A stretch of 63,848 nucleotides of DNA, the filler included, from Octopus bimaculoides (taxonomy: Eukaryota), in assembly GCF_001194135.2 (NCBI RefSeq). It is 7 parts of 7 records of this genome, joined end to end, with 100 filler letters (N's around TTAATTAATTAA, not from the genome) between each part and the next. Parts side by side here need not be neighbours in the genome. Positions count along the whole stretch, not along the records: positions 1 to 17,135 come from NC_068985.1; 6 more parts are not named here. One strand, written 5' to 3'. The notes under the pieces were generated by a model, which made no database searches, was not told the origin of the DNA, and worked only from the letters and a program-made list of their open reading frames with translations. Made by a program: the position numbers and the translations under genes. Position 1 is the stretch's first letter, and every line of letters starts with the position of its first letter. This document shows positions 1,533 to 17,135 of this stretch, in pieces.

Positions 1533-4400
1533 ATGTCCAGAAACTGGAGGAGCATGGAATTGGCATTGTTTTTGAGAGCCTGGCGCTGTGCTGAAGGAGA
1601 TAACCCAAACAATATAATCACAGCTGCACTGAAAAGCAATAGTTACACCAGAACTTAATCAAAAATAGAACGAAAGAAGCAGGAGTTTACACACTCCTAC
1701 AACCTCATACGATCCCATATCAGCACTCTTGATGCCATCTTTGATAATAAACACAGCAAAGATGACAAGAATGGAGGCATGGATGCAGATGAAAGATGTC
1801 ACCCCCACTTGGTAGACATTCAAGAAAACAAAGAAGAAGATTCAAGTGAGAAACCTGCCCGAAAAGTAAACCCAAGTGCAAGTGCTCCTACCACCATCAA
1901 AGCAAAAAACCATGGAGGTGAAAGAGCCAAGAAAGAACAACTAAAAGAAGCAAAAACTAAAACAAGAACAAAACATGAAACAGCCAAAGAAAGAAGCAAA
2001 CCTGACTACCCATATAACAAAAAGGATAAAAAGAGACAGCACACACGAATATGCAAATTCTACTTGAAAGGTGTCTGCTGGCATGGAGAGGGAGGTGCAA
2101 GCTGTCGTTTTGCACACCAACGACTCCGCCACATAAACATGAAACAGGGAAAGGACTATGCACCACCTGCCCCAAAACAGAGGTACGTAGATGTAGTGCA
2201 TGCTACAAACCAGACTTATCAACAGGTTGTTGAAAGGGCAACTGCTGAACAACAATCCTTTTTGTGTATGGCACAAAAGATTATACAGCAGCTGACCTAG
2301 CTACATTAATCTCACAGATGGGACTATCCCCAATACACAAGACCACCACAGCAAATAGACCCAAGGTGGGCACCACTGGCAACAACACACACATATCACA
2401 TTGGTGCTCTTATTGAACATCAGAGGACTGTTAACACTTAGTAACAGGACAAAAATGTGAAAGTGACATCGACGCTACTCTTAGATCACAACATGGTAGA
2501 CCTGACCATGTACGGACCAAAGGAAACCATGGACATGCAGCCTACAAGAAACTCTCAAAATCTTTCCAGCTTGAACTTCCATAAGGCAAACTGGAAACAA
2601 ATTGAAAAAGAGATCCTCAAACAAAACTGGCTTAAATGTCTCTCCTCACTGGACATCAACATGAAACTCCAACAATTCATGTCTGTAATGCAAGCCATAT
2701 GCTACAAATGTGTCCAGAGAGAAAGGCCACTGAAAACAAGAACAAAATCCCCAAGGAGAGGAAAATTCTTATGAGACGGCATACAAAAGTTTCAAATTGC
2801 CTAAACAAACAAATTGAAAGCGGTGAAATGTCCCGCATGAAAATACAACTGCTGGAGATTTAAAAAAATCTGCAACTCTCCCATGAAAAAGAAAGAGCAG
2901 ACAAAGAAGACTGGGCTATAGACAATATAAAATCTAACCTCAGAGCTTTCTACAAGATTGCCAAAGAAACAGCTTCAGTGCACTGCAGGATAGGGCCACT
3001 CCTCGAAAAAGATGGTACACTCACAGGAAACCCAATGAGGATAAGTGAAATACTAAATGAGCAATTCAAAAGTATTTTCACTCCACCCCTAGAACACTTG
3101 CAAGTCAGCAATCCAACCGACTTTTTTTACCACAGTAGATATAAAAACAGAAGCAGTGATGATCAATTACATTAATATAAAGGAAGACGATGTAATAAGT
3201 GCTATAGATGAAATGAACCCAAACTCAGCTACTGGCCCTGATGGATTCCCAGCAATCCTTCTAAAAGTATGTAAGCGAGTCCTAGCAAGACCACTGCAGT
3301 CCCTCTTTCAGAGCTTCCTTGCAACTGGCAAACTTCCAAGAAACTGAAGGAGGGTAAAATATGCCCTATTCATAAAGGAGGTAGCAGAGCGGAGCCCAAG
3401 AACTACAGACCTATCTCTCTGACCTCGCACATCAGCAAGGTCATGGAATGAATAGTCAGAAGACAACTAATCGCCTTCCTTGAAGAAAATGACTTGCTGC
3501 CTGACACCCAACATGGTTTCCGACCAGGAAGAAGCTGCCTGACTCAGCTCTTACAACACTATGGCTGGGTGCTAAAACAGCTGCTCAACCACTCAAATGT
3601 GGAAGTGATATATCTCAACTTTGCAAAGGCCTTTGATAAAGTCGATCATGGAATGATATGTCACAAACTGCATGATCTCGGCATAGTTGGAAAATTGAGA
3701 GAATGGTTCCATGACTTTCTGAAGGATAGAAGTCAGGTTGTAGTAGCCAATGGGGCCACCTCCAATGACACGCAAATAGTGGCACTGCTTTGGGACCACT
3801 ACTGTTCATAATGGCCCTCTCAGACATGCCCTCAGCCACACAGAGAGCCACGATCACAAGTTATGCAGATGATACAAAAGTCTCACAGGTAATACAGAAC
3901 CCTGAAGACACTATGCACCTGCAATGTGAGCTGGATGAAATATACAAGTGGGCTGAAAAGAATAGCATGTAGTTTAATGCTGAAAAGTTGCAAGCCTTGT
4001 GCTATCAGCATGCAAAACTAAATGCAATACACATTAAATACATTGGACCTGGAGGGATTGCAATCCCAGAGGCACAGTCAGTGCGAGACCTTGGTATTTA
4101 CATGAGTAATGATGCATCCTTTTATGTGCATGTTGCTTGTCCCAAACTCTGGCATCGAGAGTTACACAAATACTAGAACTGAGCGCCACTGCATAGTGCC
4201 AAGGACTTCAAATTTGCCATCTAGATGTAGGACAAGATACTGCAATAGCCTGGGCTTCAGAGGTCCACAGTTCTTCAATATCCTCCCGAAGGACCCGAGA
4301 GACCTGCATGAGGTAAATGTAGGTGTCTTCAAAATAAAGCTGGACCTCATACTGTCAAATGTCCTAGATGAGCCAACTTTCCGACAGGAGGTGCCGCAAT
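1533..4400 (+). mobile_element. Decayed CR1-like non-LTR retrotransposon (ORF1 with CCCH zinc finger; ORF2 with deleted APE and frameshifted RT)
   Basis: ORF1 frame 1533-2300 has one in-frame stop and CKFYLKGVCWHGEGGASCRFAH. APE ends LLNIRGL (about 2407) and LDHN (about 2478) are present. RT motifs include GPDGFP, KGGSRAEPKNYRPISLTS, QHGFRPGRSCLTQLL, YLNFAKAFDKVDH, LGPLLF and YADD (3862-3873). Confidence 0.9.
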
Positions 4401-4918
4401 TAATTATTCATCTCATCATGTGCATTTTTTATCAAAATAACATCACAGTGAATATAATGATCAGAGTGAATAAATATAAAATATGTATACATAAATAAGA
4501 AATCATTTGATCTAGAATCAACCTCTAAAAAGAGTTTGCTAAATGTTTTTTATTCATTCCCTCGTTTCTACCAGTGCTAAAGGAGTGCATGATGTGGTTT
4601 TAGTCATTTTGTTGTCTATTTCGAGCATGTAGGTGCTGTTTCTCAGTACCCTAACTTATAATTATATCTATATAATTATATATATATATATACACACAAC
4701 ACACAGATATTACATAGAATATCTAACCATATCATATACATGATATGGATAGATGGACAAACAGATATTTGAAGAAAGATGTCCTTTAAATTTATCTACT
4801 TTTTTTTTAAAGATCTTAGAAAAACAAAATGACACAAAAGTTTTAGAATGAAAATTTTATATTGTGTGCTCTGATTGTGTGATTTTCCCAATACATATAT
4901 TAAGGAGTGATCCATATA

Positions 4919-5941
4919 TCAGGTTGAGTAAAAACTAAGCAACATTTTGAACCATAAAGAATTTGTACCAGATTTTTGCAGAGTTTTGAATTTTTTAAAA
5001 CATTTTTTTTTGCAATTGTCTGGTAATACAGACATAAACTTGCCCAAATGCATCAAGAAGTAAACATTGATTTTTTTTCACCATTGTTACAATTATCTGA
5101 AATGGAACTGTCAAAGTGCGATATTTGGACAAAAAACCACTCAAGAACTGGCAAAAGAACTTCAAGTTAGCCAGAAAACTACCTGCAACCAGTTGCATGC
5201 AATTGGAAAATCAAAAAAAAAACTCGACAAATGGGCACTACACAATTTGAATGAAAATCAGAAAATGTGCAGATATGAAATTTGCTCATTGCTTTTTCTC
5301 CATAACCAGACCGATCCATTTCTCAACCATATTGTAACCTGCGATGGAAAGTGGATTCCGTACAATAAAAAACATTCTTTGCAGTACTTGGACCAAAATG
5401 AAGCACCAAAAACCTTCCCTAAACCCGAGAAGGTTATGGTGACTGTTTGGTGATGTACTGCTGGACTCATCCACTATAACTTCTTAAAACCTGGAAAAAC
5501 CATTATTGCAGAAACATATTGCCATAAAATTGCCAAAATGAAAGAAAAACTGCTACTCCTCCATCCCAGACTGGTCAACAAAAAAGGGCCAATCATTCTT
5601 CATGATAATGCTCCACCACACATTTCACTAATGATGCTCCAAAAGTTGAGGAAACTTGGCTACAAAATCCTTCCCCATCTAGCTTATTCCCCAGACCTTT
5701 CTCCCACTGACTAACACTTTTTCAAGCACCTTGATGATTTCCTGCAAGAGAAGGAGTTCAAAAATGAAACTGATGCTGAAAGTGCATTCAAAGTGTACAT
5801 TAGCTCTAGAACTCCAGATTTTTATATTACTAGAATAAACAAACTTGTAACTCAGCAAAAATGTGTTGATTTCCGCATTGTTAAAATATATTGTGATGAA
5901 TTTCATGTTTCAAAACGTTGCTTACTTTGTACTCAGCCTGA
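4919..5941 (+). mobile_element. Mariner (D,D34D-type) DNA transposon, internally deleted and inactive
   Basis: 40-bp terminal inverted repeats (4919-4958 and 5902-5941, 34/40 identical by eye) flanked by TA. Transposase remnants IVTCDGKW, KVMVTVW, LHDNAPPH and YSPDLSPTD* are present with stops and frameshifts. Confidence 0.93.
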
Positions 5942-7075: not shown

Positions 7076-7508
7076 TTTTGCCACTATAGGTAATATCAGG
7101 AAATATGGTATACATACATTAATTATAATTTAACTTTTACCAAATTCCTTGGTGCTTATAACAAAAACACAAAATAAATACTAAGTTTCAGAAAACAATA
7201 CTTATTACCTTTAAATAGAATTACATAAAACAGATTTTTCATTTGTATATTTGCATGAATATATATCATTATTTTTCTAAATTTTATCAATGTATTTGTG
7301 ATCTACTCCATCAAAAACCTATCCTATGCATATTTTTAACTTACTCTGTATCTTTTACTTTTTCTACCCCTCTTAGAATGTGATGTAAAGAGTGACTGGA
7401 AACATCAACCAACTAACCAATCAACATTTATATAGGCCATTATTAGAGATGCATAAACACACATACAAACATAAAATATATGTATGCATCTGTGTGTGTG
7501 TGTGTAAG

Positions 7509-7910
7509 GTGCAGATGTGGCTTTGTGGAAAGAAGTTCACTTCCCAACCACATGGTTCTGGGCTCAATCCCACTGCATGACACCTTAGGGCAAGTGTCTT
7601 CTATTATAGCCTTGGGTTGACCAAAGCCTTGTGAGTGGTTTTGGAAGATGTAAATTGTATGCAAGCCAGTCATATATGTGTGTCTGTGTTATTGTCCCCT
7701 TGCCTTAACATTGTGCAATACTTGTAAATCAATGTCACAATCTCCTTTGTTCTAAATCTTCCGTGAAAAAATGTCTGGTCATAAGGAAGTATTATCATAC
7801 TTGTATATAGGTTGGCAATGGAAGGGTATCTAGCTGTAGAAAATCTGCCTCAACAGAATTCCATCTGATGCATGCAAGTATGAAGAAGCAGACATAAAAA
7901 TGATGATGAT
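7509..7910 (+). mobile_element. SINE with family-A head and RTE-like tail type 2
   Basis: Family-A head at 7509-7680. The tail ends GGTTGGC...GAAGGGTATCTAGCTGTAGAAAATCTGCC...ATGATGATGAT. Confidence 0.75.
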
Positions 7911-8900: not shown

Positions 8901-9060
8901 CCCTTTCTCAACTAAGAGACCTGTAATAGCTCTCTCCCATTCTTCCTTTTCTTTCATTCATGAAAATGATATCTGAAGTCAATTTTCCCCTATGAAATGT
9001 TTTGTTTAAAATATAAACAACAGTACAATATTTAATGAAAACCAATAAACTAATACCATC

Positions 9061-9083
9061 TTTTTTTCTTGTGATATTTTCAG
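9061..9083 (+). promoter_or_regulatory. 3' splice acceptor ahead of the NKY coding exon (alternative CAG at 9091-9093)
   Basis: TTTTTTTCTTGTGATATTTTCAG ends 18 nt before the ATG, which implies an upstream non-coding exon. Confidence 0.65.
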
Positions 9084-9101
9084 TTCTTATCAGAATACAA
9101 C

Positions 9102-9440
9102 ATGAAGCAGTATTTCAGCAGCCAGTTAATAATTTTCGTCTTCTGTTGTATTGGAGTGATACTGTCTGGAGAAATTTGGGAAGGGAATCATGAAAATTCT
9201 GACAAGAACTTACTATCATTGATCACCAGAGCAGCAGTAGCATCACGAGACAATGCACTTATGGCACCACCAAGTGGATATCAAGGTCGAATGCCAGCAT
9301 ACTATATACGAACCCAGAGAGGACTCAAAAGAGAACCAAATTGGATATGGATGCCATCCCATGGTTATGTTCCTGTCCCAGAGACTTCCAATGCTAGAAG
9401 TTCTGATAATCGTGGAAGTACAATTCTGAGATATGGTTAA
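9102..9440 (+). CDS. NKY: Neuropeptide precursor, NKY (NKY-2-like) family: signal peptide about aa 1-23; mature peptide EPNWIWMPSHGYVPVPETSNARSSDNRGSTILRY-amide (aa 78-111, nt 9333-9434)
   Basis: Intact 112-aa ORF with A at -3 (AAC ATG). It has a hydrophobic N-terminus (LIIFVFCCIGVILS), a dibasic KR at aa 76-77 and a C-terminal RY-G-stop amidation signal. The WIWMPxxGYVxVP...I(L/M)RYG pattern matches annelid/mollusc NKY-2 peptides as I recall them; no database search was run. A pyrimidine tract plus CAG acceptor lies at 9061-9083 and AATAAA at 9552-9557. Confidence 0.88.
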   Translation: MKQYFSSQLIIFVFCCIGVILSGEIWEGNHENSDKNLLSLITRAAVASRDNALMAPPSGYQGRMPAYYIRTQRGLKREPNWIWMPSHGYVPVPETSNARSSDNRGSTILRYG

Positions 9441-9551
9441 ATATGAAATCATCTTCGAATAACACGAACCTTTAAGTAACTGCCAACAATGGATAACTCT
9501 GTATTTCTCTTGTTTCTTACAATGACACATACTTTTTGGATTTAACACAGA

Positions 9552-9557
9552 AATAAA
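9552..9557 (+). terminator. Candidate polyadenylation signal of the NKY transcript
   Basis: AATAAA lies about 110 nt after the stop codon and is followed by T/GT-rich sequence. The region is AT-rich, so a chance match is possible. Confidence 0.45.
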
Positions 9558-9855
9558 TTTACAATATCTTTAAAGCAATTTGTTTGATTCTTATTATGGG
9601 TGTATAGTGATGTTCTTAGTTTTATATTAGTATCATTATTAAATGTAATAGAAACAATTTAAAGCAAATACACATGGTAATAAAACTTATTTCTTCAACA
9701 AAAGCTGGAAAATATGATCACATCAAAGATAGTATAATAAAACTTCATAGAGAAAGTAATAATTTTGTATTTTTGTCCAATGTAAGAATCCTTATATATG
9801 TTACATATATATATATACAATGTAAGTATCCTTATATATGTTACATATATATATA

Positions 9856-11455: not shown

Positions 11456-11543
11456 ATTATTAAGTATCAGGCTATCAAAGTGATTTATTAAGTATTAGGC
11501 TTATCTGAGTGGCTTATGATCCAAAATATTTTAGCTACAACCA

Positions 11544-11967
11544 TCCTGTATTTCCTTGTATACATGAAATATCGTATACATGAAATATCGTAGACATGAA
11601 GTATCCAATGTGTCCAATTTTTAAGATGATATTTGAGGAAGATTTGATAGCTATTTTTAAGAGGTCAGTGACACTACAGTCCTGTATTTCCTTGTATACA
11701 TGAAATATTGTATACATGAAATATCGTAGACATGAAATATCGTAGACATGAAATATCATAGACATGAAGTATCCAATGTGTCCAATTTTTAAGATGATAT
11801 TTGAGGAAGATTTGATAGCTATTTTTAAGAGGTCAGTGACACTACAGTCCTGTATTTCTTTGTATACATGAAATATCGTAGACATGAAGTATCCAATGTG
11901 TCCAATTTTTAAGATGACATTTGAGGAAGATTTGATAGCTATTTTTAAGAGGTCAGTGACACTACAG
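11544..11967. repeat. Three-copy tandem repeat (136, 168 and 120 bp) with a nested 16-bp unit
   Basis: Units start at 11544, 11680 and 11848. The inner ACATGAAATATCGTAG unit is present 2, 4 and 1 times, which accounts for the length differences exactly. Confidence 0.9.
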
Positions 11968-11969
11968 AA

Positions 11970-12440
11970 ACTATCTTGTTTGCTAAGATTAATCAGGTAG
12001 TACAGGAAGGAGCTACTTCCAATGACTGGTATAACAGCATCAATGGCAATTACTACAAAGGCAATGGAAAGGGACCAGTGAGAGGGAAATTTCACGAGTG
12101 TCAAACTCAAGGACTGAATCATGAAAGTAACAAATAGAGCTTCTGCAAAGTTAATTCAGGACGAGAATAACAAAGGCAAGATATTGTTTGGGCTTATTCA
12201 AGGATACAGAATCATAAATAGCAAGTTTTTATGTGATGCAACAGCAAGAGAGAATTTCATCCCAGAAGAAACTATTCTATTGTGTATTCTTAATTTGGAA
12301 AAGTATTTCAAAAGTCACCCTCACCTGCAGTCTAAATATTAAAGAAACTAGTGGTAGATAAACGGTTTGAGAAAATTTTAGGATGCAGTTAGAAAGATTA
12401 CAGTTGGTAGTGACTTCAGTAAGGAATTCAGTGTATTTAA
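11970..12440 (+). mobile_element. Ancient RTE reverse-transcriptase fragment
   Basis: Degenerate INQVVQEG...NDW...YKG and MKVTNR...LFGLIQG...LNLEKYF correspond to RTE RT motifs (QFGF, DLEKAFD). Confidence 0.6.
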
Positions 12441-12752
12441 GTACTTAGGACTATAATACTAGAATTTAGGATTGGTTATTTTTTGGCCCTTTATATACTA
12501 AGCTAAGATCTTTATATGGTAACCTTGTTCTTATAGCAGCTTCTGTGGTAGAGTTGCAGAAGAACATACATGCATGCATAAATAAATGCACACACATATA
12601 AAGCAAGCAAAATAATGGAGAGGTTGGTGTGGATACCTGGATCCCCTTTCATTTGCCATATACATATACAAGGCATATATAAAATATATATTATTTATAT
12701 AATATATAACAACATATATAGATGATATAAAAAAATAGTATATAATATATAT

Positions 12753-13144
12753 AGGCGCAAGAGTGGCTGTGTGGTAAGAAGTTTGCTTCCCAACCACATG
12801 GTTCCAGGTTCAGTCCCACTGCATGGCACCTTTGACAAGTATTTCCTTCTATAGCCTCAGGCCAGACAATGCTTGTGAGTGGATTTGGTAGATGGAAACT
12901 GAAAGAAGCCCGTCATATATAAATATATATATGTATGTATTTATGTGTCTGTGTTTGTCCCCCCACCATTGCTTGACAACTGATTTTGGTGTTTATGTCC
13001 CAGTAACTTAGAGGTTTGGCAAAAGGAAACCGATAGAATGAGTACTAGGTTTACAAAGAATAAGTCCTGGGATCAAATTGTTCGACTAAAGGCGATGCTC
13101 CAGCATGGATGCAGTCAAATGACTGAAACAAGTAAAAGAATGAA
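12753..13144 (+). mobile_element. tRNA-derived SINE, family A (head + internal AT/GT microsatellite + tail type 1), CpG-decayed copy
   Basis: A-box-like TGGCTGTGTGG and B-box-like GGTTCAGTCCC; collinear with the copies at 27345 and 62635. Confidence 0.85.
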
Positions 13145-13154
13145 ATATATATCA

Positions 13155-14915
13155 TTATCATCATCATTGTTTAACATCCGCTTTCCATGCTGAATTGGGT
13201 TCGACAATTTGACTGAGGACTGGCAAGCCAGGAAGCTGCACCAGGCTCTAATCTGATCTAGCAAGGTTTCTACAGCTGGATACCCTTCCTAACGCCATCC
13301 ACTCTGAGAGTGTAGTGGGTGCTTTTTATGTGCTACTGGTATGGGGGCCAGTCAGGCATACTGGCATCGACCACACATGAATCGTGCTTTTTACATGCCA
13401 CCAGTACGTATGGAAGCCAATCAGGTGGCACTGGCATCAACCATGCTCGAATGGTGCTCTTTATGTGCTACCGGGACGGGAACAGTCAAGCGACACTGGC
13501 ATTTACCACACTCGTATGGTGTTTTTTATATGCCACTGGCATGAGATTCAGTCCGGTGGGACTGGCATTGACCATGCTCGAATGGTGCGTTTCACATGCC
13601 AGTCAGGCAGTACTGGAATCAGCCACGACAATGATTTAACTTGACTCAACAGGTCTTCTCAAGCATAGTATATATCCCAATGATTGAAGGGCACACTTAA
13701 ATGGGCCGGTTATGCGACACTGGCATAGGCCATGACTACGTCTCACTTGACTAGCTGGGTCTTCTCAAGCACAGCATATCTCCAAAGGTCTTGGTTGTTT
13801 GTCATTGCTCCTGTGAGGCCCAACTTTTGAAGGTCATGCTTCACCACCTCATCCCATGCCTTCCTGGGTCTACCTCTTCCACAGGTTCCCTCCACTGTTA
13901 GGGTGTGACACTTTTTCATACAGCTGTCCTCATCCATACACAACACATGACCATAACAGTGCAGTTGTCTTTCTTGCACAGCACATCTGATGCTTCTTAG
14001 GTCCAACTTTTCTCTCGGGGCACTTACATTCTGTTGTGTATGCACACTGACATTACACATCCAGCAGAGCATACTAGTATCATTTCTTGCTTACACATGT
14101 CTTCAGCAGTCACAGCCCATGTTTTACTGCTGTGTAGCATGGCTGTTCGCACACATGCATCATACAGTTTACCTTTCACTCTGAGCGAGAGGCCTTTTGT
14201 TACCAGCAGAGGTAGGAGCTCTCTGAACTTTACCCGGGATATTCTTATTCTAGCAGCTACGCTCTCAGAGCATCCACCCCCACTACTGACTTGGTCACCT
14301 AGCTATCAACTACTTCTATTTTTTCCTGCTACAATGTGACAGAAGCTGTTTTCGCACATTTTCAGTGTTTATTGCCCCTGTGCATCTTCTACACACAAAA
14401 ATTATTTTCCTAATTAGCCTCCCTTTGATATTGCTGCACCTCTTATTTGTCCATAGCTTACACTGGATACATCTTATAGAGTTTCTACCTATCCTTTTCT
14501 ACAGATTGAGCAGGGCCATCCACCTGAAGGGATTTGGGATTTGCCTGCCTTCCTACTTAGTAAGACTTTGGTTTTGCTAGATTGATTCTAAGGCCCTTTG
14601 ATTCTAATCTTTGCTTCCACACCTGAAACTTCTCCTCTAGTTCTGATAGTGACTCAGCTATTTAGAGCAAGGTCATCAGCATAGAGGAGCTCCCAGGTGC
14701 ATCCTGTCTTGAATTCCTCTGTTATCGCCTGGAGACCTATGATGAATAAGAGGGGGCTGAGGACTGATCCTTGGTGGGCCCTACCCCTACCTGGATTTCT
14801 TCAATATACTCGCTGCCAACCTTCACTTTAATGACAGCATCCCTGTACATGGCTTGTACAGCTCTCAATAACCACTCATCTATCCCTAGTTTCCGCATTG
14901 ACTACCAGATGAAGT
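13155..14915 (-). mobile_element. 5'-truncated RTE LINE with a PHD-like finger in ORF2 and a tandemly repeated 3' UTR
   Basis: Minus strand shows WELLYADDLAL (YADD about 14672-14683), EKFQVWKQRLESKGL and RGRGRPRKAWDEVVKHDL. A (GAT)n tail lies at about 13155-13168. Confidence 0.92.
13319..13625. repeat. Five diverged 65-70-bp tandem units in the RTE 3' UTR
   Basis: Units beginning GTGC(T/G)(T/C)TTTA.. start at about 13319, 13384, 13454, 13519 and 13585. The first four contain CTGGCAT and the fifth has CTGGAAT. Confidence 0.75.
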
Positions 14916-16250: not shown

Positions 16251-16850
16251 CACACTGGAGGACACCGCCCTCTCTGGACTGAGCGGCTGTCTTGTAGACT
16301 TTGGACTCTTCTTTGTTGACTTATTCTATAACAACTAGTTTAATTATGACTTCTATGGTCAAAGGGGAGGTAACTCTAATTTTTTTTCTTTGTTTTCTTT
16401 CTGTTTTTATTCACCCTTCTATTTTTTGCATCAACCATGTACTCATTTTTTTCTCATGTACCAGTGTCCTGATTTTCAAATGAAATAGACCATGTGCTCA
16501 GAGACTGAAATTGCTGAACTAAGCACATAATAAAAACCTACCTTCATAGCAAGAAAATATTAGTAGTTCTTATTTTTATACAGAGTACATAAAATGATTC
16601 TTATCTCTCACTGAATGGAGTACTTTTTTGTTGATCTTACCTTAACAGAACAGTGAACTATATATCTTTTATCTTTTTATCTTTCACTTGTTTCAGACAT
16701 TAAAGGGATTTAGTGGAACAAATCAACCCTAGAACTTATCTTTTAAAATCTAGTACTCATTCTATCGGCCTCTTTTGCCAAACCGCTAAGTTACGGGGAC
16801 GTAAACATACCAACAACAGTTGTTGGGGACAAACACAGACACAAAGGCAC

Positions 16851-17135
16851 ATCATCATCATCATCGTTTAACGTCCGCTTTCCATGCTAGCATGGGTTGG
16901 ACGATTTGACTGAGGACTGGTGAAACCGGATGGCAACACCAGGCTCCAGTCTGATTTGGCAGAGTTTCTACAGCTGGATGCCCTTCCTAACGCCAACCAC
17001 TCAGAGAGTGTAGTGGGTGCTTTTACGTGTCACCCGCACGAAAACGGCCACGCTCGAAATGGTGTCTTTTATGTGCCACCTGCACAAGCCAATCCAGGGG
17101 CACTGGCAACGATCTCGCTCGAGAATCCTACAGGA
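16851..17135 (-). mobile_element. Young RTE 3' end, cut by the scaffold end and adjoining a SINE-A tail (16683-16842, minus)
   Basis: Same family as 13155-13330 but with CpGs intact; begins with (CAT)n on the plus strand. Confidence 0.85.

What the first reader, a model, noticed from the sequence alone, without database searches (positions are those of the whole stretch)
9102..9440. Intact NKY-type neuropeptide precursor isolated among dead transposons
Seen: this is the only clean ORF in 64 kb, with a signal peptide, a KR site, a 34-aa peptide EPNWIWMPSHGYVPVP...STILRY, an amidation Gly and a stop. The N-terminal Glu could cyclise to pyroglutamate. Established: NKY peptides are a lophotrochozoan family of long RYamides, and Platynereis NKY activates an sNPF/PrRP-type receptor. 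Inference: this is the octopod NKY-2 orthologue, whose function in cephalopods is poorly known. A short single-exon CDS like this is easily missed by gene annotation.
Basis: partly seen in the sequence, partly recalled or inferred. Interest (0 to 1): 0.8.

Follow-up and report, generated by a model that had tools for sequence, protein, structure and literature searches.

The report
Octopus NKY-2 neuropeptide precursor gene
The 112-codon reading frame is a real, conserved octopus gene for the precursor of NKY-2, a long RY-amide neuropeptide already known from other molluscs and annelids, so it is a correct but fairly ordinary find.

Summary
The ORF at 9102-9440 (+) is exactly as described. It has a hydrophobic N-terminal signal-like segment, a Lys-Arg site, a 34-residue peptide EPNWIWMPSHGYVPVPETSNARSSDNRGSTILRY, a terminal Gly and a stop.

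It is not a chance ORF:
- Orthologues exist in Octopus vulgaris (92% identity), Argonauta hians (85%) and a more distant contig (62-65%).
- Pairwise dN/dS is 0.09-0.27.
- The only colinear conserved DNA in the 17 kb is 9065-9821.
- That block begins at a TTTCAG splice acceptor invariant in all four species, 18 nt before the ATG.
- It runs through about 380 nt of 3'UTR containing an invariant AATAAA.

A profile of the cephalopod proteins finds about 17 short mollusc-type precursors ending ...[FY]WIWMPAQGYV.VP...LRYG. These carry the published NKY-2 signature and include the oyster precursor whose NKY peptide has been synthesised and assayed.

- The piece holds three other long ORFs, all derived from transposons or repeats.
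- The gene probably has upstream non-coding exons.
- The NKY/sNPF-receptor pairing is regarded in the literature as probable cross-talk.

In passing, octopuses also carry a diverged paralogue that has lost the RY-amide peptide.

The parts
9057..9083 (+). Polypyrimidine tract and 3' splice acceptor (TTTCAG ending at 9083)
   Evidence: TTTCAG is invariant in the window, O. vulgaris, Argonauta and the ENA contig. Similarity collapses upstream of it. The colinear conserved block starts at 9059-9065. The O. vulgaris gene model splices into this site.
9084..9101 (+). 18-nt leader between acceptor and start codon (5'UTR part of the coding exon). It has no in-frame stop, and A is at -3 of the ATG.
   Evidence: Sequence read directly. 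Conserved in the three octopods and in the O. vulgaris paralogue.
9102..9170 (+). Start codon and predicted signal peptide (aa 1-23, MKQYFSSQLIIFVFCCIGVILSG). The cleavage site after G23 is inferred.
   Evidence: Hydropathy peak of 3.26 over residues 9-19. M1 and FCCIG are conserved in four cephalopod sequences. Nearly all aligned family members have an N-terminal hydrophobic segment at the same place. SignalP was not run.
9171..9326 (+). Propeptide / spacer (aa 24-75), with conserved DKNLLSLITR and RDNALMAPPSGYQGR blocks
   Evidence: These blocks are invariant or nearly invariant in four cephalopods. dN/dS is 0.07-0.40, as low as for the mature peptide. The L.Y.L and APP..Y..K motifs are shared with other molluscan NKY-2 precursors.
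9327..9332 (+). Dibasic Lys76-Arg77 prohormone convertase site
   Evidence: Invariant in all 18 aligned precursors. This Lys is the 'K' of the name NKY as predicted for the oyster (PMC4200219).
9333..9434 (+). Predicted mature 34-residue NKY-2 peptide EPNWIWMPSHGYVPVPETSNARSSDNRGSTILRY
   Evidence: Carries the NKY-2 motif. Aligns 17/33 to the oyster NKY peptide. W81, I82, W83, M84, P85, G88, Y89, P93, R110 and Y111 are invariant or nearly so. Calculated monoisotopic mass is 3914.89 as the amide and 3896.88 with pyroGlu plus amide.
9435..9440 (+). Amidation-donor Gly112 followed directly by TAA stop
   Evidence: G112 is invariant. 13 of 18 family members end exactly at this Gly and the rest add only K/R residues.
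9441..9821 (+). Conserved 3'UTR with AATAAA at 9552-9557 (invariant in three octopods) and at 9736-9741 (kept in O. vulgaris)
   Evidence: Alignment A3. Positions of the poly(A) signals. The colinear block ends at 9821 against O. vulgaris and at 9854 against Argonauta. A 40-bp duplication at 9778-9855 marks the end.

Best explanation
Window 9084-~9821 (+) is the last exon of an octopod orthologue of the lophotrochozoan NKY-2 neuropeptide gene, and the only coding exon.

Shown here: the reading frame, its conservation under purifying selection, the splice acceptor, the conserved 3'UTR, and homology of the whole precursor to known NKY-2 precursors.

Inferred from the established route of neuropeptide biosynthesis:
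1. The 112-residue prepropeptide enters the ER by its signal peptide, which is cleaved around G23.
2. A prohormone convertase cuts after K76-R77 in secretory granules.
3. Peptidylglycine alpha-amidating monooxygenase (PAM) uses the terminal Gly112 to give ...STILRY-NH2.
4. The N-terminal Glu, conserved in all four cephalopod sequences, may be cyclised to pyroglutamate.
5. The resulting 34-mer is released from neurons or neuroendocrine cells and acts on a rhodopsin-type GPCR. The sNPF/NKY-type receptor is the only candidate tested elsewhere and is a weak one, so the true receptor is unknown.

The gene most likely has one or more upstream non-coding exons lying outside this 17-kb piece.
For: - ORF and coordinates.
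- Orthologues: O. vulgaris 92%, Argonauta hians 85%, ENA contig 62-65%.
- Colinear conservation is confined to 9065-9821; every other cross-species hit is multi-copy repeat.
- dN/dS is 0.27 (vs O. vulgaris), 0.17 (vs Argonauta) and 0.09 (vs the ENA contig). Differences fall mostly at third codon positions: 5/5/10 and 12/7/28 for positions 1/2/3.
- Only the + frame stays open in all four species.
- The acceptor is invariant.
- The 3'UTR is conserved, with an invariant AATAAA.
- Profile search: 22 hits, of which about 17 are 110-157-aa precursors ending ...WIWMPAQGYV.VP...RYG.
- hhalign to the oyster-type precursor P0022: 97.8%, E 7e-13.
- P0022 ends in the published C. gigas NKY peptide apart from one residue.
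- Literature definition of NKY-2.
Against: - There is no expression or peptide evidence. No RNA-seq, EST or mass-spectrometry data could be consulted.
- The signal peptide was judged by hydropathy and conservation only.
- The core motif departs from the consensus in octopods: PSHG instead of PAQG, and EPN instead of G[YF] before WIWMP.
- No upstream exon or promoter was found in the window, so the transcript structure in this species is inferred from O. vulgaris.
- There is no in-frame stop between the acceptor and the ATG. An N-terminal extension from an upstream exon, as in the O. vulgaris model, is therefore not formally excluded.
- The physiological receptor is unknown.
Confidence: 0.9

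Rival explanations
1. The real product is longer. Upstream exons supply an earlier ATG and an N-terminal extension of about 39 residues, as in the 151-aa O. vulgaris model P0001.
For: There is no in-frame stop between the acceptor (9083) and the ATG. The O. vulgaris annotation joins three upstream exons with canonical GT-AG sites in frame.
Against: - The extension would bury the hydrophobic signal segment 45 residues or more from the N-terminus.
- The Argonauta model and nearly all non-cephalopod homologues start just before the hydrophobic segment.
- None of the three upstream O. vulgaris exons has a detectable counterpart in the window.
- The ENA 139-aa model is simply read-through of the intron.
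Confidence: 0.06
2. An intact-looking but silent relic. The ORF is preserved by recency of descent rather than function in this species, for instance because a transposon insertion has separated it from its promoter.
For: The exon is surrounded by transposon debris: RVT_1 fragments at 3494-3972, a mariner-like fragment at 5067-5453 and multi-copy repeats. No upstream exon was found in the window.
Against: Purifying selection is seen on the branch pairs that include the window (dN/dS 0.27, 0.17, 0.09). The acceptor, leader, start, KR, RYG, stop and poly(A) signal are all intact. In O. vulgaris the introns are 7-20 kb, so an absent upstream exon within the 9 kb available is expected.
Confidence: 0.03
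3. A chance or transposon-derived ORF, or a gene on the opposite strand (the 101-aa ORF at 9243-9548, -).
For: The piece has three other ORFs of at least 112 aa that derive from repeats. An antisense ORF of 101 aa exists.
Against: There is a single-copy colinear orthologue in three other genomes. The antisense frame is broken in all three other species. The ORF belongs to a family with invariant processing sites.
Confidence: 0.005
4. An NPY/NPF, sNPF or NKY-1 precursor rather than NKY-2.
For: It has a C-terminal RY-amide and a length of 34 residues, similar to NPY/NPF. NKY has been called a paralogue of NPY.
Against: - No Pfam match at E up to 10, including the pancreatic-hormone/NPY family.
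- The C-terminus is ILRY, not RxR[FY].
- The peptide sits at the very C-terminus of the precursor, not directly after the signal peptide.
- The NKY-1 motif FW[RQ]P[LM]G[YG] is absent and the NKY-2 motif is present.
- It is a single long peptide, not several short sNPF/LFRFamide copies.
Confidence: 0.005

Closest known systems
Crassostrea gigas NKY (NKY-2 type) precursor and its peptide GGIWIWMPAQGYVSVPRDEVGGASNKGSSSNLLRY-NH2 (Stewart et al. 2014, PMC4200219; Yanez-Guerra et al., bioRxiv 10.1101/712687)
   Same: - Precursor of about 110-126 aa: signal peptide, propeptide with an L.Y.L...APP motif, K-R, and one long peptide at the extreme C-terminus ending RYG-stop.
- The WIWMP..GYV.VP core.
- A low-complexity G/S/N-rich middle.
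- 17/33 identity in the peptide; hhalign 97.8% over 101 columns.
   Different: - Octopods have EPN instead of GG[IFY] before WIWMP, and PSHG instead of PAQG.
- The peptide is one residue shorter.
- The N-terminal Glu allows a pyroGlu that the oyster peptide cannot form.
- The oyster peptide has been synthesised and assayed; the octopus one has not.
NKY-2 cluster of De Oliveira et al. 2019 (PMC6425005): molluscs, annelids, nemerteans
   Same: The diagnostic Lys (of the KR site) and the C-terminal Tyr, and the central consensus G[YF]WIWMPAQG. The window has NWIWMPSHG.
   Different: Three of the ten consensus positions differ in octopods (G to N, A to S, Q to H). The more distant cephalopod-like contig P0003 keeps PAQG.
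[quoted passage not shown]
   Same: Long (up to 43 aa) RY-amide peptides from a single-copy precursor.
   Different: The Platynereis NKY-1 ending cited is IMRY-amide, and the NKY-1 subgroup has a different core motif. The receptor pairing (EC50 420 nM) is now suspected to be cross-talk with the sNPF receptor. Nothing is known for cephalopods.
NPY/NPF family
   Same: About 35-residue amidated peptide ending in R-[YF]-NH2, with a Pro-rich N-terminal half.
   Different: - No detectable sequence homology (Pfam scan empty).
- No RxR[FY] ending.
- The peptide is at the C-terminal end of the precursor rather than right after the signal peptide.
- The G/S/N-rich C-terminal half is unlikely to form the amphipathic helix of the PP-fold (inference, not tested).

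Membership tests
NKY-2 neuropeptide precursors | Central consensus G[YF]WIWMPAQG in the mature peptide (PMC6425005) | tested here: met
   The window has PNWIWMPSHG: the WIWMP..G core is intact and 3 of 10 positions are substituted. W81, I82, W83, M84, P85 and G88 are invariant or nearly so across 18 sequences.
NKY-2 neuropeptide precursors | Diagnostic Lys at the N-terminal boundary (K of the K-R site) and Tyr at the C-terminal end | tested here: met
   K76-R77 and Y111 are invariant in all 18 aligned sequences.
NKY-2 neuropeptide precursors | C-terminal R-Y-G (amidation signal) at or next to the end of the precursor | tested here: met
   R110, Y111 and G112 are followed by TAA. 13 of 18 members end at this Gly.
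NKY-2 neuropeptide precursors | Statistically significant homology of the whole precursor to recognised members | tested here: met
   The cephalopod profile finds molluscan precursors at E 6e-8 to 7e-4 against 1.84 billion proteins. hhalign to P0022 gives 97.8%, E 7e-13. P0022 carries the published oyster NKY peptide with one substitution.
NKY-2 neuropeptide precursors | N-terminal signal peptide (secreted precursor) | tested here: inconclusive
   The hydrophobic core at residues 9-21 (Kyte-Doolittle 3.26), a Lys in the n-region and small residues at -2/-1 fit, and the segment is conserved. No dedicated predictor such as SignalP was available.
NKY-2 neuropeptide precursors | The peptide is actually produced, amidated and expressed in nervous tissue | not testable with these tools
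   No transcriptome or peptidome data were accessible. Masses to look for: 3914.89 Da (amide) and 3896.88 Da (pGlu plus amide).
NKY-1 neuropeptide precursors | Central consensus FW[RQ]P[LM]G[YG] | tested here: not met
   The motif is absent from the 112-aa product.
NPY/NPF (Pfam PF00159 pancreatic hormone family) | Match to the family profile, an RxR[FY]-amide ending, and the peptide placed directly after the signal peptide | tested here: not met
   No Pfam family matched at E up to 10. The ending is ILRY, and the peptide is at the C-terminus of the precursor.
sNPF / LFRFamide | Several short (5-10 aa) RF/RY-amide copies per precursor | tested here: not met
   There is one 34-residue peptide, a single dibasic site and a single Gly-stop.

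The most novel reading that the evidence does not exclude
The NKY-2 precursor may yield more than the RY-amide.

Its propeptide (aa 24-75) is under purifying selection as strong as the mature peptide.

Octopuses also keep a second gene derived from NKY-2 (O. bimaculoides A0A0L8HDN1 and O. vulgaris P0043, on the same chromosome about 7 Mb away). That gene retains the acceptor, leader, signal peptide, part of the propeptide and the 3'UTR. In place of the WIWMP...RY-amide region it has an unrelated, non-amidated tail that follows an RIRR site.

If that paralogue is expressed and processed, it would be a cephalopod-specific prohormone born from NKY-2. It would also point to a bioactive or sorting role for the shared N-terminal half.
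Probability: 0.15. Interest if true: 0.5.

Novelty: new member of a known kind. Interest (0 to 1): 0.25.

Why it matters
It gives a cleanly delimited octopod NKY-2 gene: coding exon, acceptor, processing sites, 3'UTR and predicted peptide masses. Public annotation either lacks this gene, labels it 'hypothetical', or gives it a doubtful N-terminal extension.

NKY is one of the lophotrochozoan peptides whose physiological receptor remains unsettled. A defined cephalopod ligand makes expression mapping and receptor deorphanisation in octopus straightforward.

Beyond that it is an expected member of a family already reported from all mollusc classes. It fills a gap in annotation rather than changing any picture.

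Tried and rejected
- Pfam scan of the product: no family at E up to 10. There is no Pfam model for NKY, so this only argues against NPY/NPF membership.
- Supplement search of De Oliveira et al. for named cephalopod NKY-2 sequences: the only hits were chance 'NKY' substrings inside unrelated proteins, and the files were cut when stored. I could not confirm whether an octopus NKY-2 was explicitly listed there.
- Full-text search for 'WIWMP': it found only the two papers already in hand.
- Exact-sequence look-ups of the window protein and of P0011: not on record. The window's species could therefore not be identified beyond an octopod distinct from O. vulgaris (dS 0.15).
- Source names of homologues: all 'hypothetical' or absent, so no database label supports or contradicts the family assignment.
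- Search of the window for the three upstream exons of the O. vulgaris model: only chance matches of 10-13 nt.
- Antisense ORF at 9243-9548: rejected because it is broken in all orthologues.
- Raw ORF length as evidence: rejected because repeat-derived ORFs of the same size occur nearby.
- Three long proteins (P0004, P0017, P0021) and the 377-aa P0015 in the profile search are repetitive, unrelated proteins matching only a propeptide stretch. I disregarded them.
- Structure prediction was not run. A largely disordered 112-aa prohormone would not have been informative.

Full report
**Observation**

The window holds an ATG-initiated ORF at 9102-9440 on the + strand, 112 codons ending in TAA. Its product is MKQYFSSQLIIFVFCCIGVILSGEIWEGNHENSDKNLLSLITRAAVASRDNALMAPPSGYQGRMPAYYIRTQRGLKREPNWIWMPSHGYVPVPETSNARSSDNRGSTILRYG.

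- A hydrophobic N-terminal segment, with mean Kyte-Doolittle 3.26 over residues 9-19.
- One dibasic site, K76-R77 (9327-9332).
- A 34-residue peptide (9333-9434).
- A terminal Gly (9435-9437) directly followed by the stop.

The claim that this is the only clean ORF does not hold within the 17-kb piece. There are four ATG-ORFs of at least 112 aa against 0.3 expected from dinucleotide shuffles. The other three are products of a decayed retroelement or of a tandem repeat:
- 1779-2300 has a zf-CCCH match and 4109-4498 lies in the same element. RVT_1 fragments in different frames sit between them at 3494-3972.
- 11535-12122 (-) overlaps the 168/120-bp repeats at 11558-11967.

ORF length alone is therefore no argument here.

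**It is a real gene**

A word-indexed search of 5.8 billion proteins found three relatives:
- An Octopus vulgaris 'hypothetical predicted protein' (92% identity).
- An Argonauta hians 'hypothetical protein' of exactly 112 aa (85%).
- An unnamed ENA contig product (62-65%).

I fetched the three loci and compared them with the window.
- The only colinear similarity is window 9065-9821, at 84% over 765 nt to O. vulgaris and 76% over 811 nt to Argonauta. All other hits are multi-copy repeats.
- Nei-Gojobori dN/dS for the CDS is 0.27, 0.17 and 0.09 against the three orthologues.
- dN/dS is similar in the signal peptide, propeptide and mature peptide.
- Substitutions concentrate at third codon positions.
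- The + frame is open in all four species and every other frame is broken. That includes the 101-aa antisense ORF seen in the window.

**Gene anatomy**

*Acceptor and upstream exons.* A TTTCAG acceptor preceded by a pyrimidine tract ends at 9083, 18 nt before the ATG. It is invariant in all four species, and similarity vanishes upstream of it. The O. vulgaris model reaches this acceptor from three small upstream exons with canonical GT-AG borders, spread over 34 kb. None of these exons has a counterpart in the 9 kb of window upstream. The first exon and promoter of the window's gene therefore probably lie outside the piece.

*Start codon.* The 39-residue N-terminal extension of the O. vulgaris model would bury the signal segment. 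It is absent from the Argonauta model and from non-cephalopod homologues. I take 9102 as the true start and the upstream exons as 5'UTR. This is inference.

*3'UTR.* Downstream, about 380 nt is conserved among the three octopods. It holds an invariant AATAAA at 9552-9557 and a second one at 9736-9741 shared with O. vulgaris. Conservation ends at a 40-bp duplication at 9778-9855.

**Identity**

De Oliveira et al. 2019 define two NKY subgroups. NKY-2 has the central consensus G[YF]WIWMPAQG plus a diagnostic Lys and a C-terminal Tyr. They report NKY from all eight mollusc classes (PMC6425005). The window peptide reads NWIWMPSHGYVPVP...LRY.

An HMM built from the four cephalopod sequences (A1) was run against 1.84 billion representatives. 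Besides the cephalopod proteins, it returned about 17 precursors of 110-157 aa. Those with a source name come from a freshwater mussel and a limpet. All end in KR-x(1-6)-[FYIV]W[IV]WMPA[QHR]G[YF][VMI].[VIL][PK]...[LIMF]RYG.

One of them, P0022, carries the Crassostrea gigas NKY peptide that Yanez-Guerra et al. synthesised (GGIWIWMPAQGYVSVPRDEVGGASNKGSSSNLLRY-NH2) with a single substitution.
- The window peptide aligns 17/33 to that published peptide.
- The cephalopod profile aligns to the whole of P0022 at hhalign probability 97.8%, E 7e-13.

In the 18-sequence alignment, K76, R77, W83, M84, P85, G88, R110, Y111 and G112 are invariant. W81, I82, Y89 and P93 are nearly so. The propeptide also shares L.Y.L and APP..Y..K motifs.

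Other families do not fit:
- The NKY-1 motif is absent.
- No Pfam family, including NPY/pancreatic hormone, matches at E up to 10.
- The architecture is not that of NPY/NPF or sNPF.

Membership in NKY-2 is therefore met on every sequence criterion I could test. The signal peptide is supported only heuristically, and production of the peptide is untested.

**How it most likely works**

The following is inferred from the general neuropeptide pathway and is not shown here:
1. Co-translational signal-peptide removal near G23.
2. Convertase cleavage after K76-R77.
3. Amidation by PAM at the expense of Gly112, giving ...STILRY-NH2.
4. Possibly cyclisation of the N-terminal Glu. That Glu is conserved in all four cephalopod sequences (KREP), whereas other taxa have D, G, N, S or A there.

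Predicted monoisotopic masses are 3914.89 Da (amide) and 3896.88 Da (pGlu plus amide).

**Receptor**

The Platynereis receptor activated by NKY is orthologous to sNPF receptors. It responds to NKY at 420 nM and also responds to FMRFamide. The oyster sNPF receptor responds to oyster NKY only at 3 uM, against 31 nM for GSLFRFamide. Both Yanez-Guerra et al. and Thiel et al. conclude that NKY probably has a different, still unknown, endogenous receptor.

**Surroundings**

The exon does sit among transposon debris:
- Frameshifted reverse-transcriptase fragments (about 2457-4498).
- A mariner-type transposase fragment (5067-5453).
- Several repeat families present in many copies at the O. vulgaris locus: 7507-7910, 12752-13139, 13153-13463 and 16709-17111.

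In Argonauta the gene lies inside a gene model on the opposite strand that has a Selenoprotein_S match. I found no conserved exon of such a gene in the window.

**Side finding**

The profile search also hit an O. bimaculoides protein, A0A0L8HDN1 (P0011, 91 aa). It has an O. vulgaris counterpart, P0043, at 76% identity.

What these share with NKY-2:
- The acceptor, the FLSKYN leader and the signal peptide.
- Part of the propeptide: 43% identity over 62 aa, E 8e-17.
- At the DNA level, part of the 3'UTR.

How they differ:
- They lack DKNLLSLITR and the whole WIWMP...RYG region.
- After an RIRR site they end in DLGFDFKKPEYEQVCGPYKVSD..., with no amidation signal.
- The alignment offsets between the propeptide and the 3'UTR differ by 55 nt, so the peptide region was remodelled with a frame change.

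The O. vulgaris copy is on the same chromosome as NKY-2, about 7 Mb away and inverted. Both species keep a 91-codon ORF, which hints at function. I could not compute dN/dS without O. bimaculoides DNA. The paralogue is not in the window.

**Verdict**

This is the coding exon of an octopod NKY-2 precursor gene. It is a new, unannotated or poorly annotated member of a known and widely distributed family, so the interest is modest. It is useful as a defined ligand for the open question of the NKY receptor. The paralogue and the strongly constrained propeptide are the only mildly unexpected features.

Noticed in passing
L004:19826-20119 (O. vulgaris OX597818.1, about 31.24-31.27 Mb, reverse); not in the window: Octopus paralogue of the NKY-2 precursor (O. 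bimaculoides A0A0L8HDN1 = P0011; O. vulgaris P0043). It has the same acceptor, FLSKYN leader, signal peptide, part of the propeptide and part of the 3'UTR. The WIWMP...RYG peptide is replaced by a non-amidated tail after RIRR. A 55-nt net offset shows the peptide region was remodelled. A 91-codon ORF is kept in both species (76% identity).
   Followed up: partly
L001:8001-8007, about 14286-14347, 34815-34847 (O. vulgaris): The O. vulgaris gene model for NKY-2 adds 39 N-terminal residues from three tiny upstream exons spread over 34 kb. These are probably 5'UTR exons miscalled as coding, since the extension would bury the signal peptide. None is detectable in the window.
   Followed up: partly
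L002:1-16339 (Argonauta hians): The Argonauta NKY-2 gene lies within a gene model on the opposite strand whose 179-aa product matches Selenoprotein_S (PF06936). This may be a nested-gene arrangement. No corresponding conserved exon was seen in the window.
   Followed up: no
window 1779-4498: Decayed non-LTR retroelement. An intact 173-aa ORF with a CCCH zinc finger (1779-2300) is followed by reverse-transcriptase fragments spread over all three frames (RVT_1 hits at 3494-3811 and 3790-3972).
   Followed up: partly
window 5067-5453: A 128-aa ORF with a TTG start and a weak match to the mariner-type Transposase_1 domain: a truncated DNA-transposon remnant.
   Followed up: partly
window 11558-11967: Tandem repeats with periods of 168, 120 and 16 bp (95-97% matches). 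They create the longest ORF of the piece (195 aa, - strand, 11535-12122), which has a repeating peptide and is an artefact of the repeat.
   Followed up: partly
window 7507-7910, 12752-13139, 13153-13463, 16709-17111: Interspersed repeat families present in 2-6 copies each within the 50-kb O. vulgaris locus (70-90% identity). They are not colinear with the window.
   Followed up: no
window 9171-9326: The propeptide of the NKY-2 precursor is as constrained as the mature peptide. DKNLLSLITR is invariant in four cephalopods and dN/dS is 0.07-0.40. It shares L.Y.L / APP..Y..K motifs with bivalve and gastropod precursors, which suggests a function beyond that of a spacer.
   Followed up: partly
window 13743-14072 (-): A 109-aa ORF containing GRGRPRKAWDEVVKHDLQKLGL. 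From memory this resembles the C-terminal tail of non-LTR retrotransposon polyproteins. It had no Pfam match.
   Followed up: no
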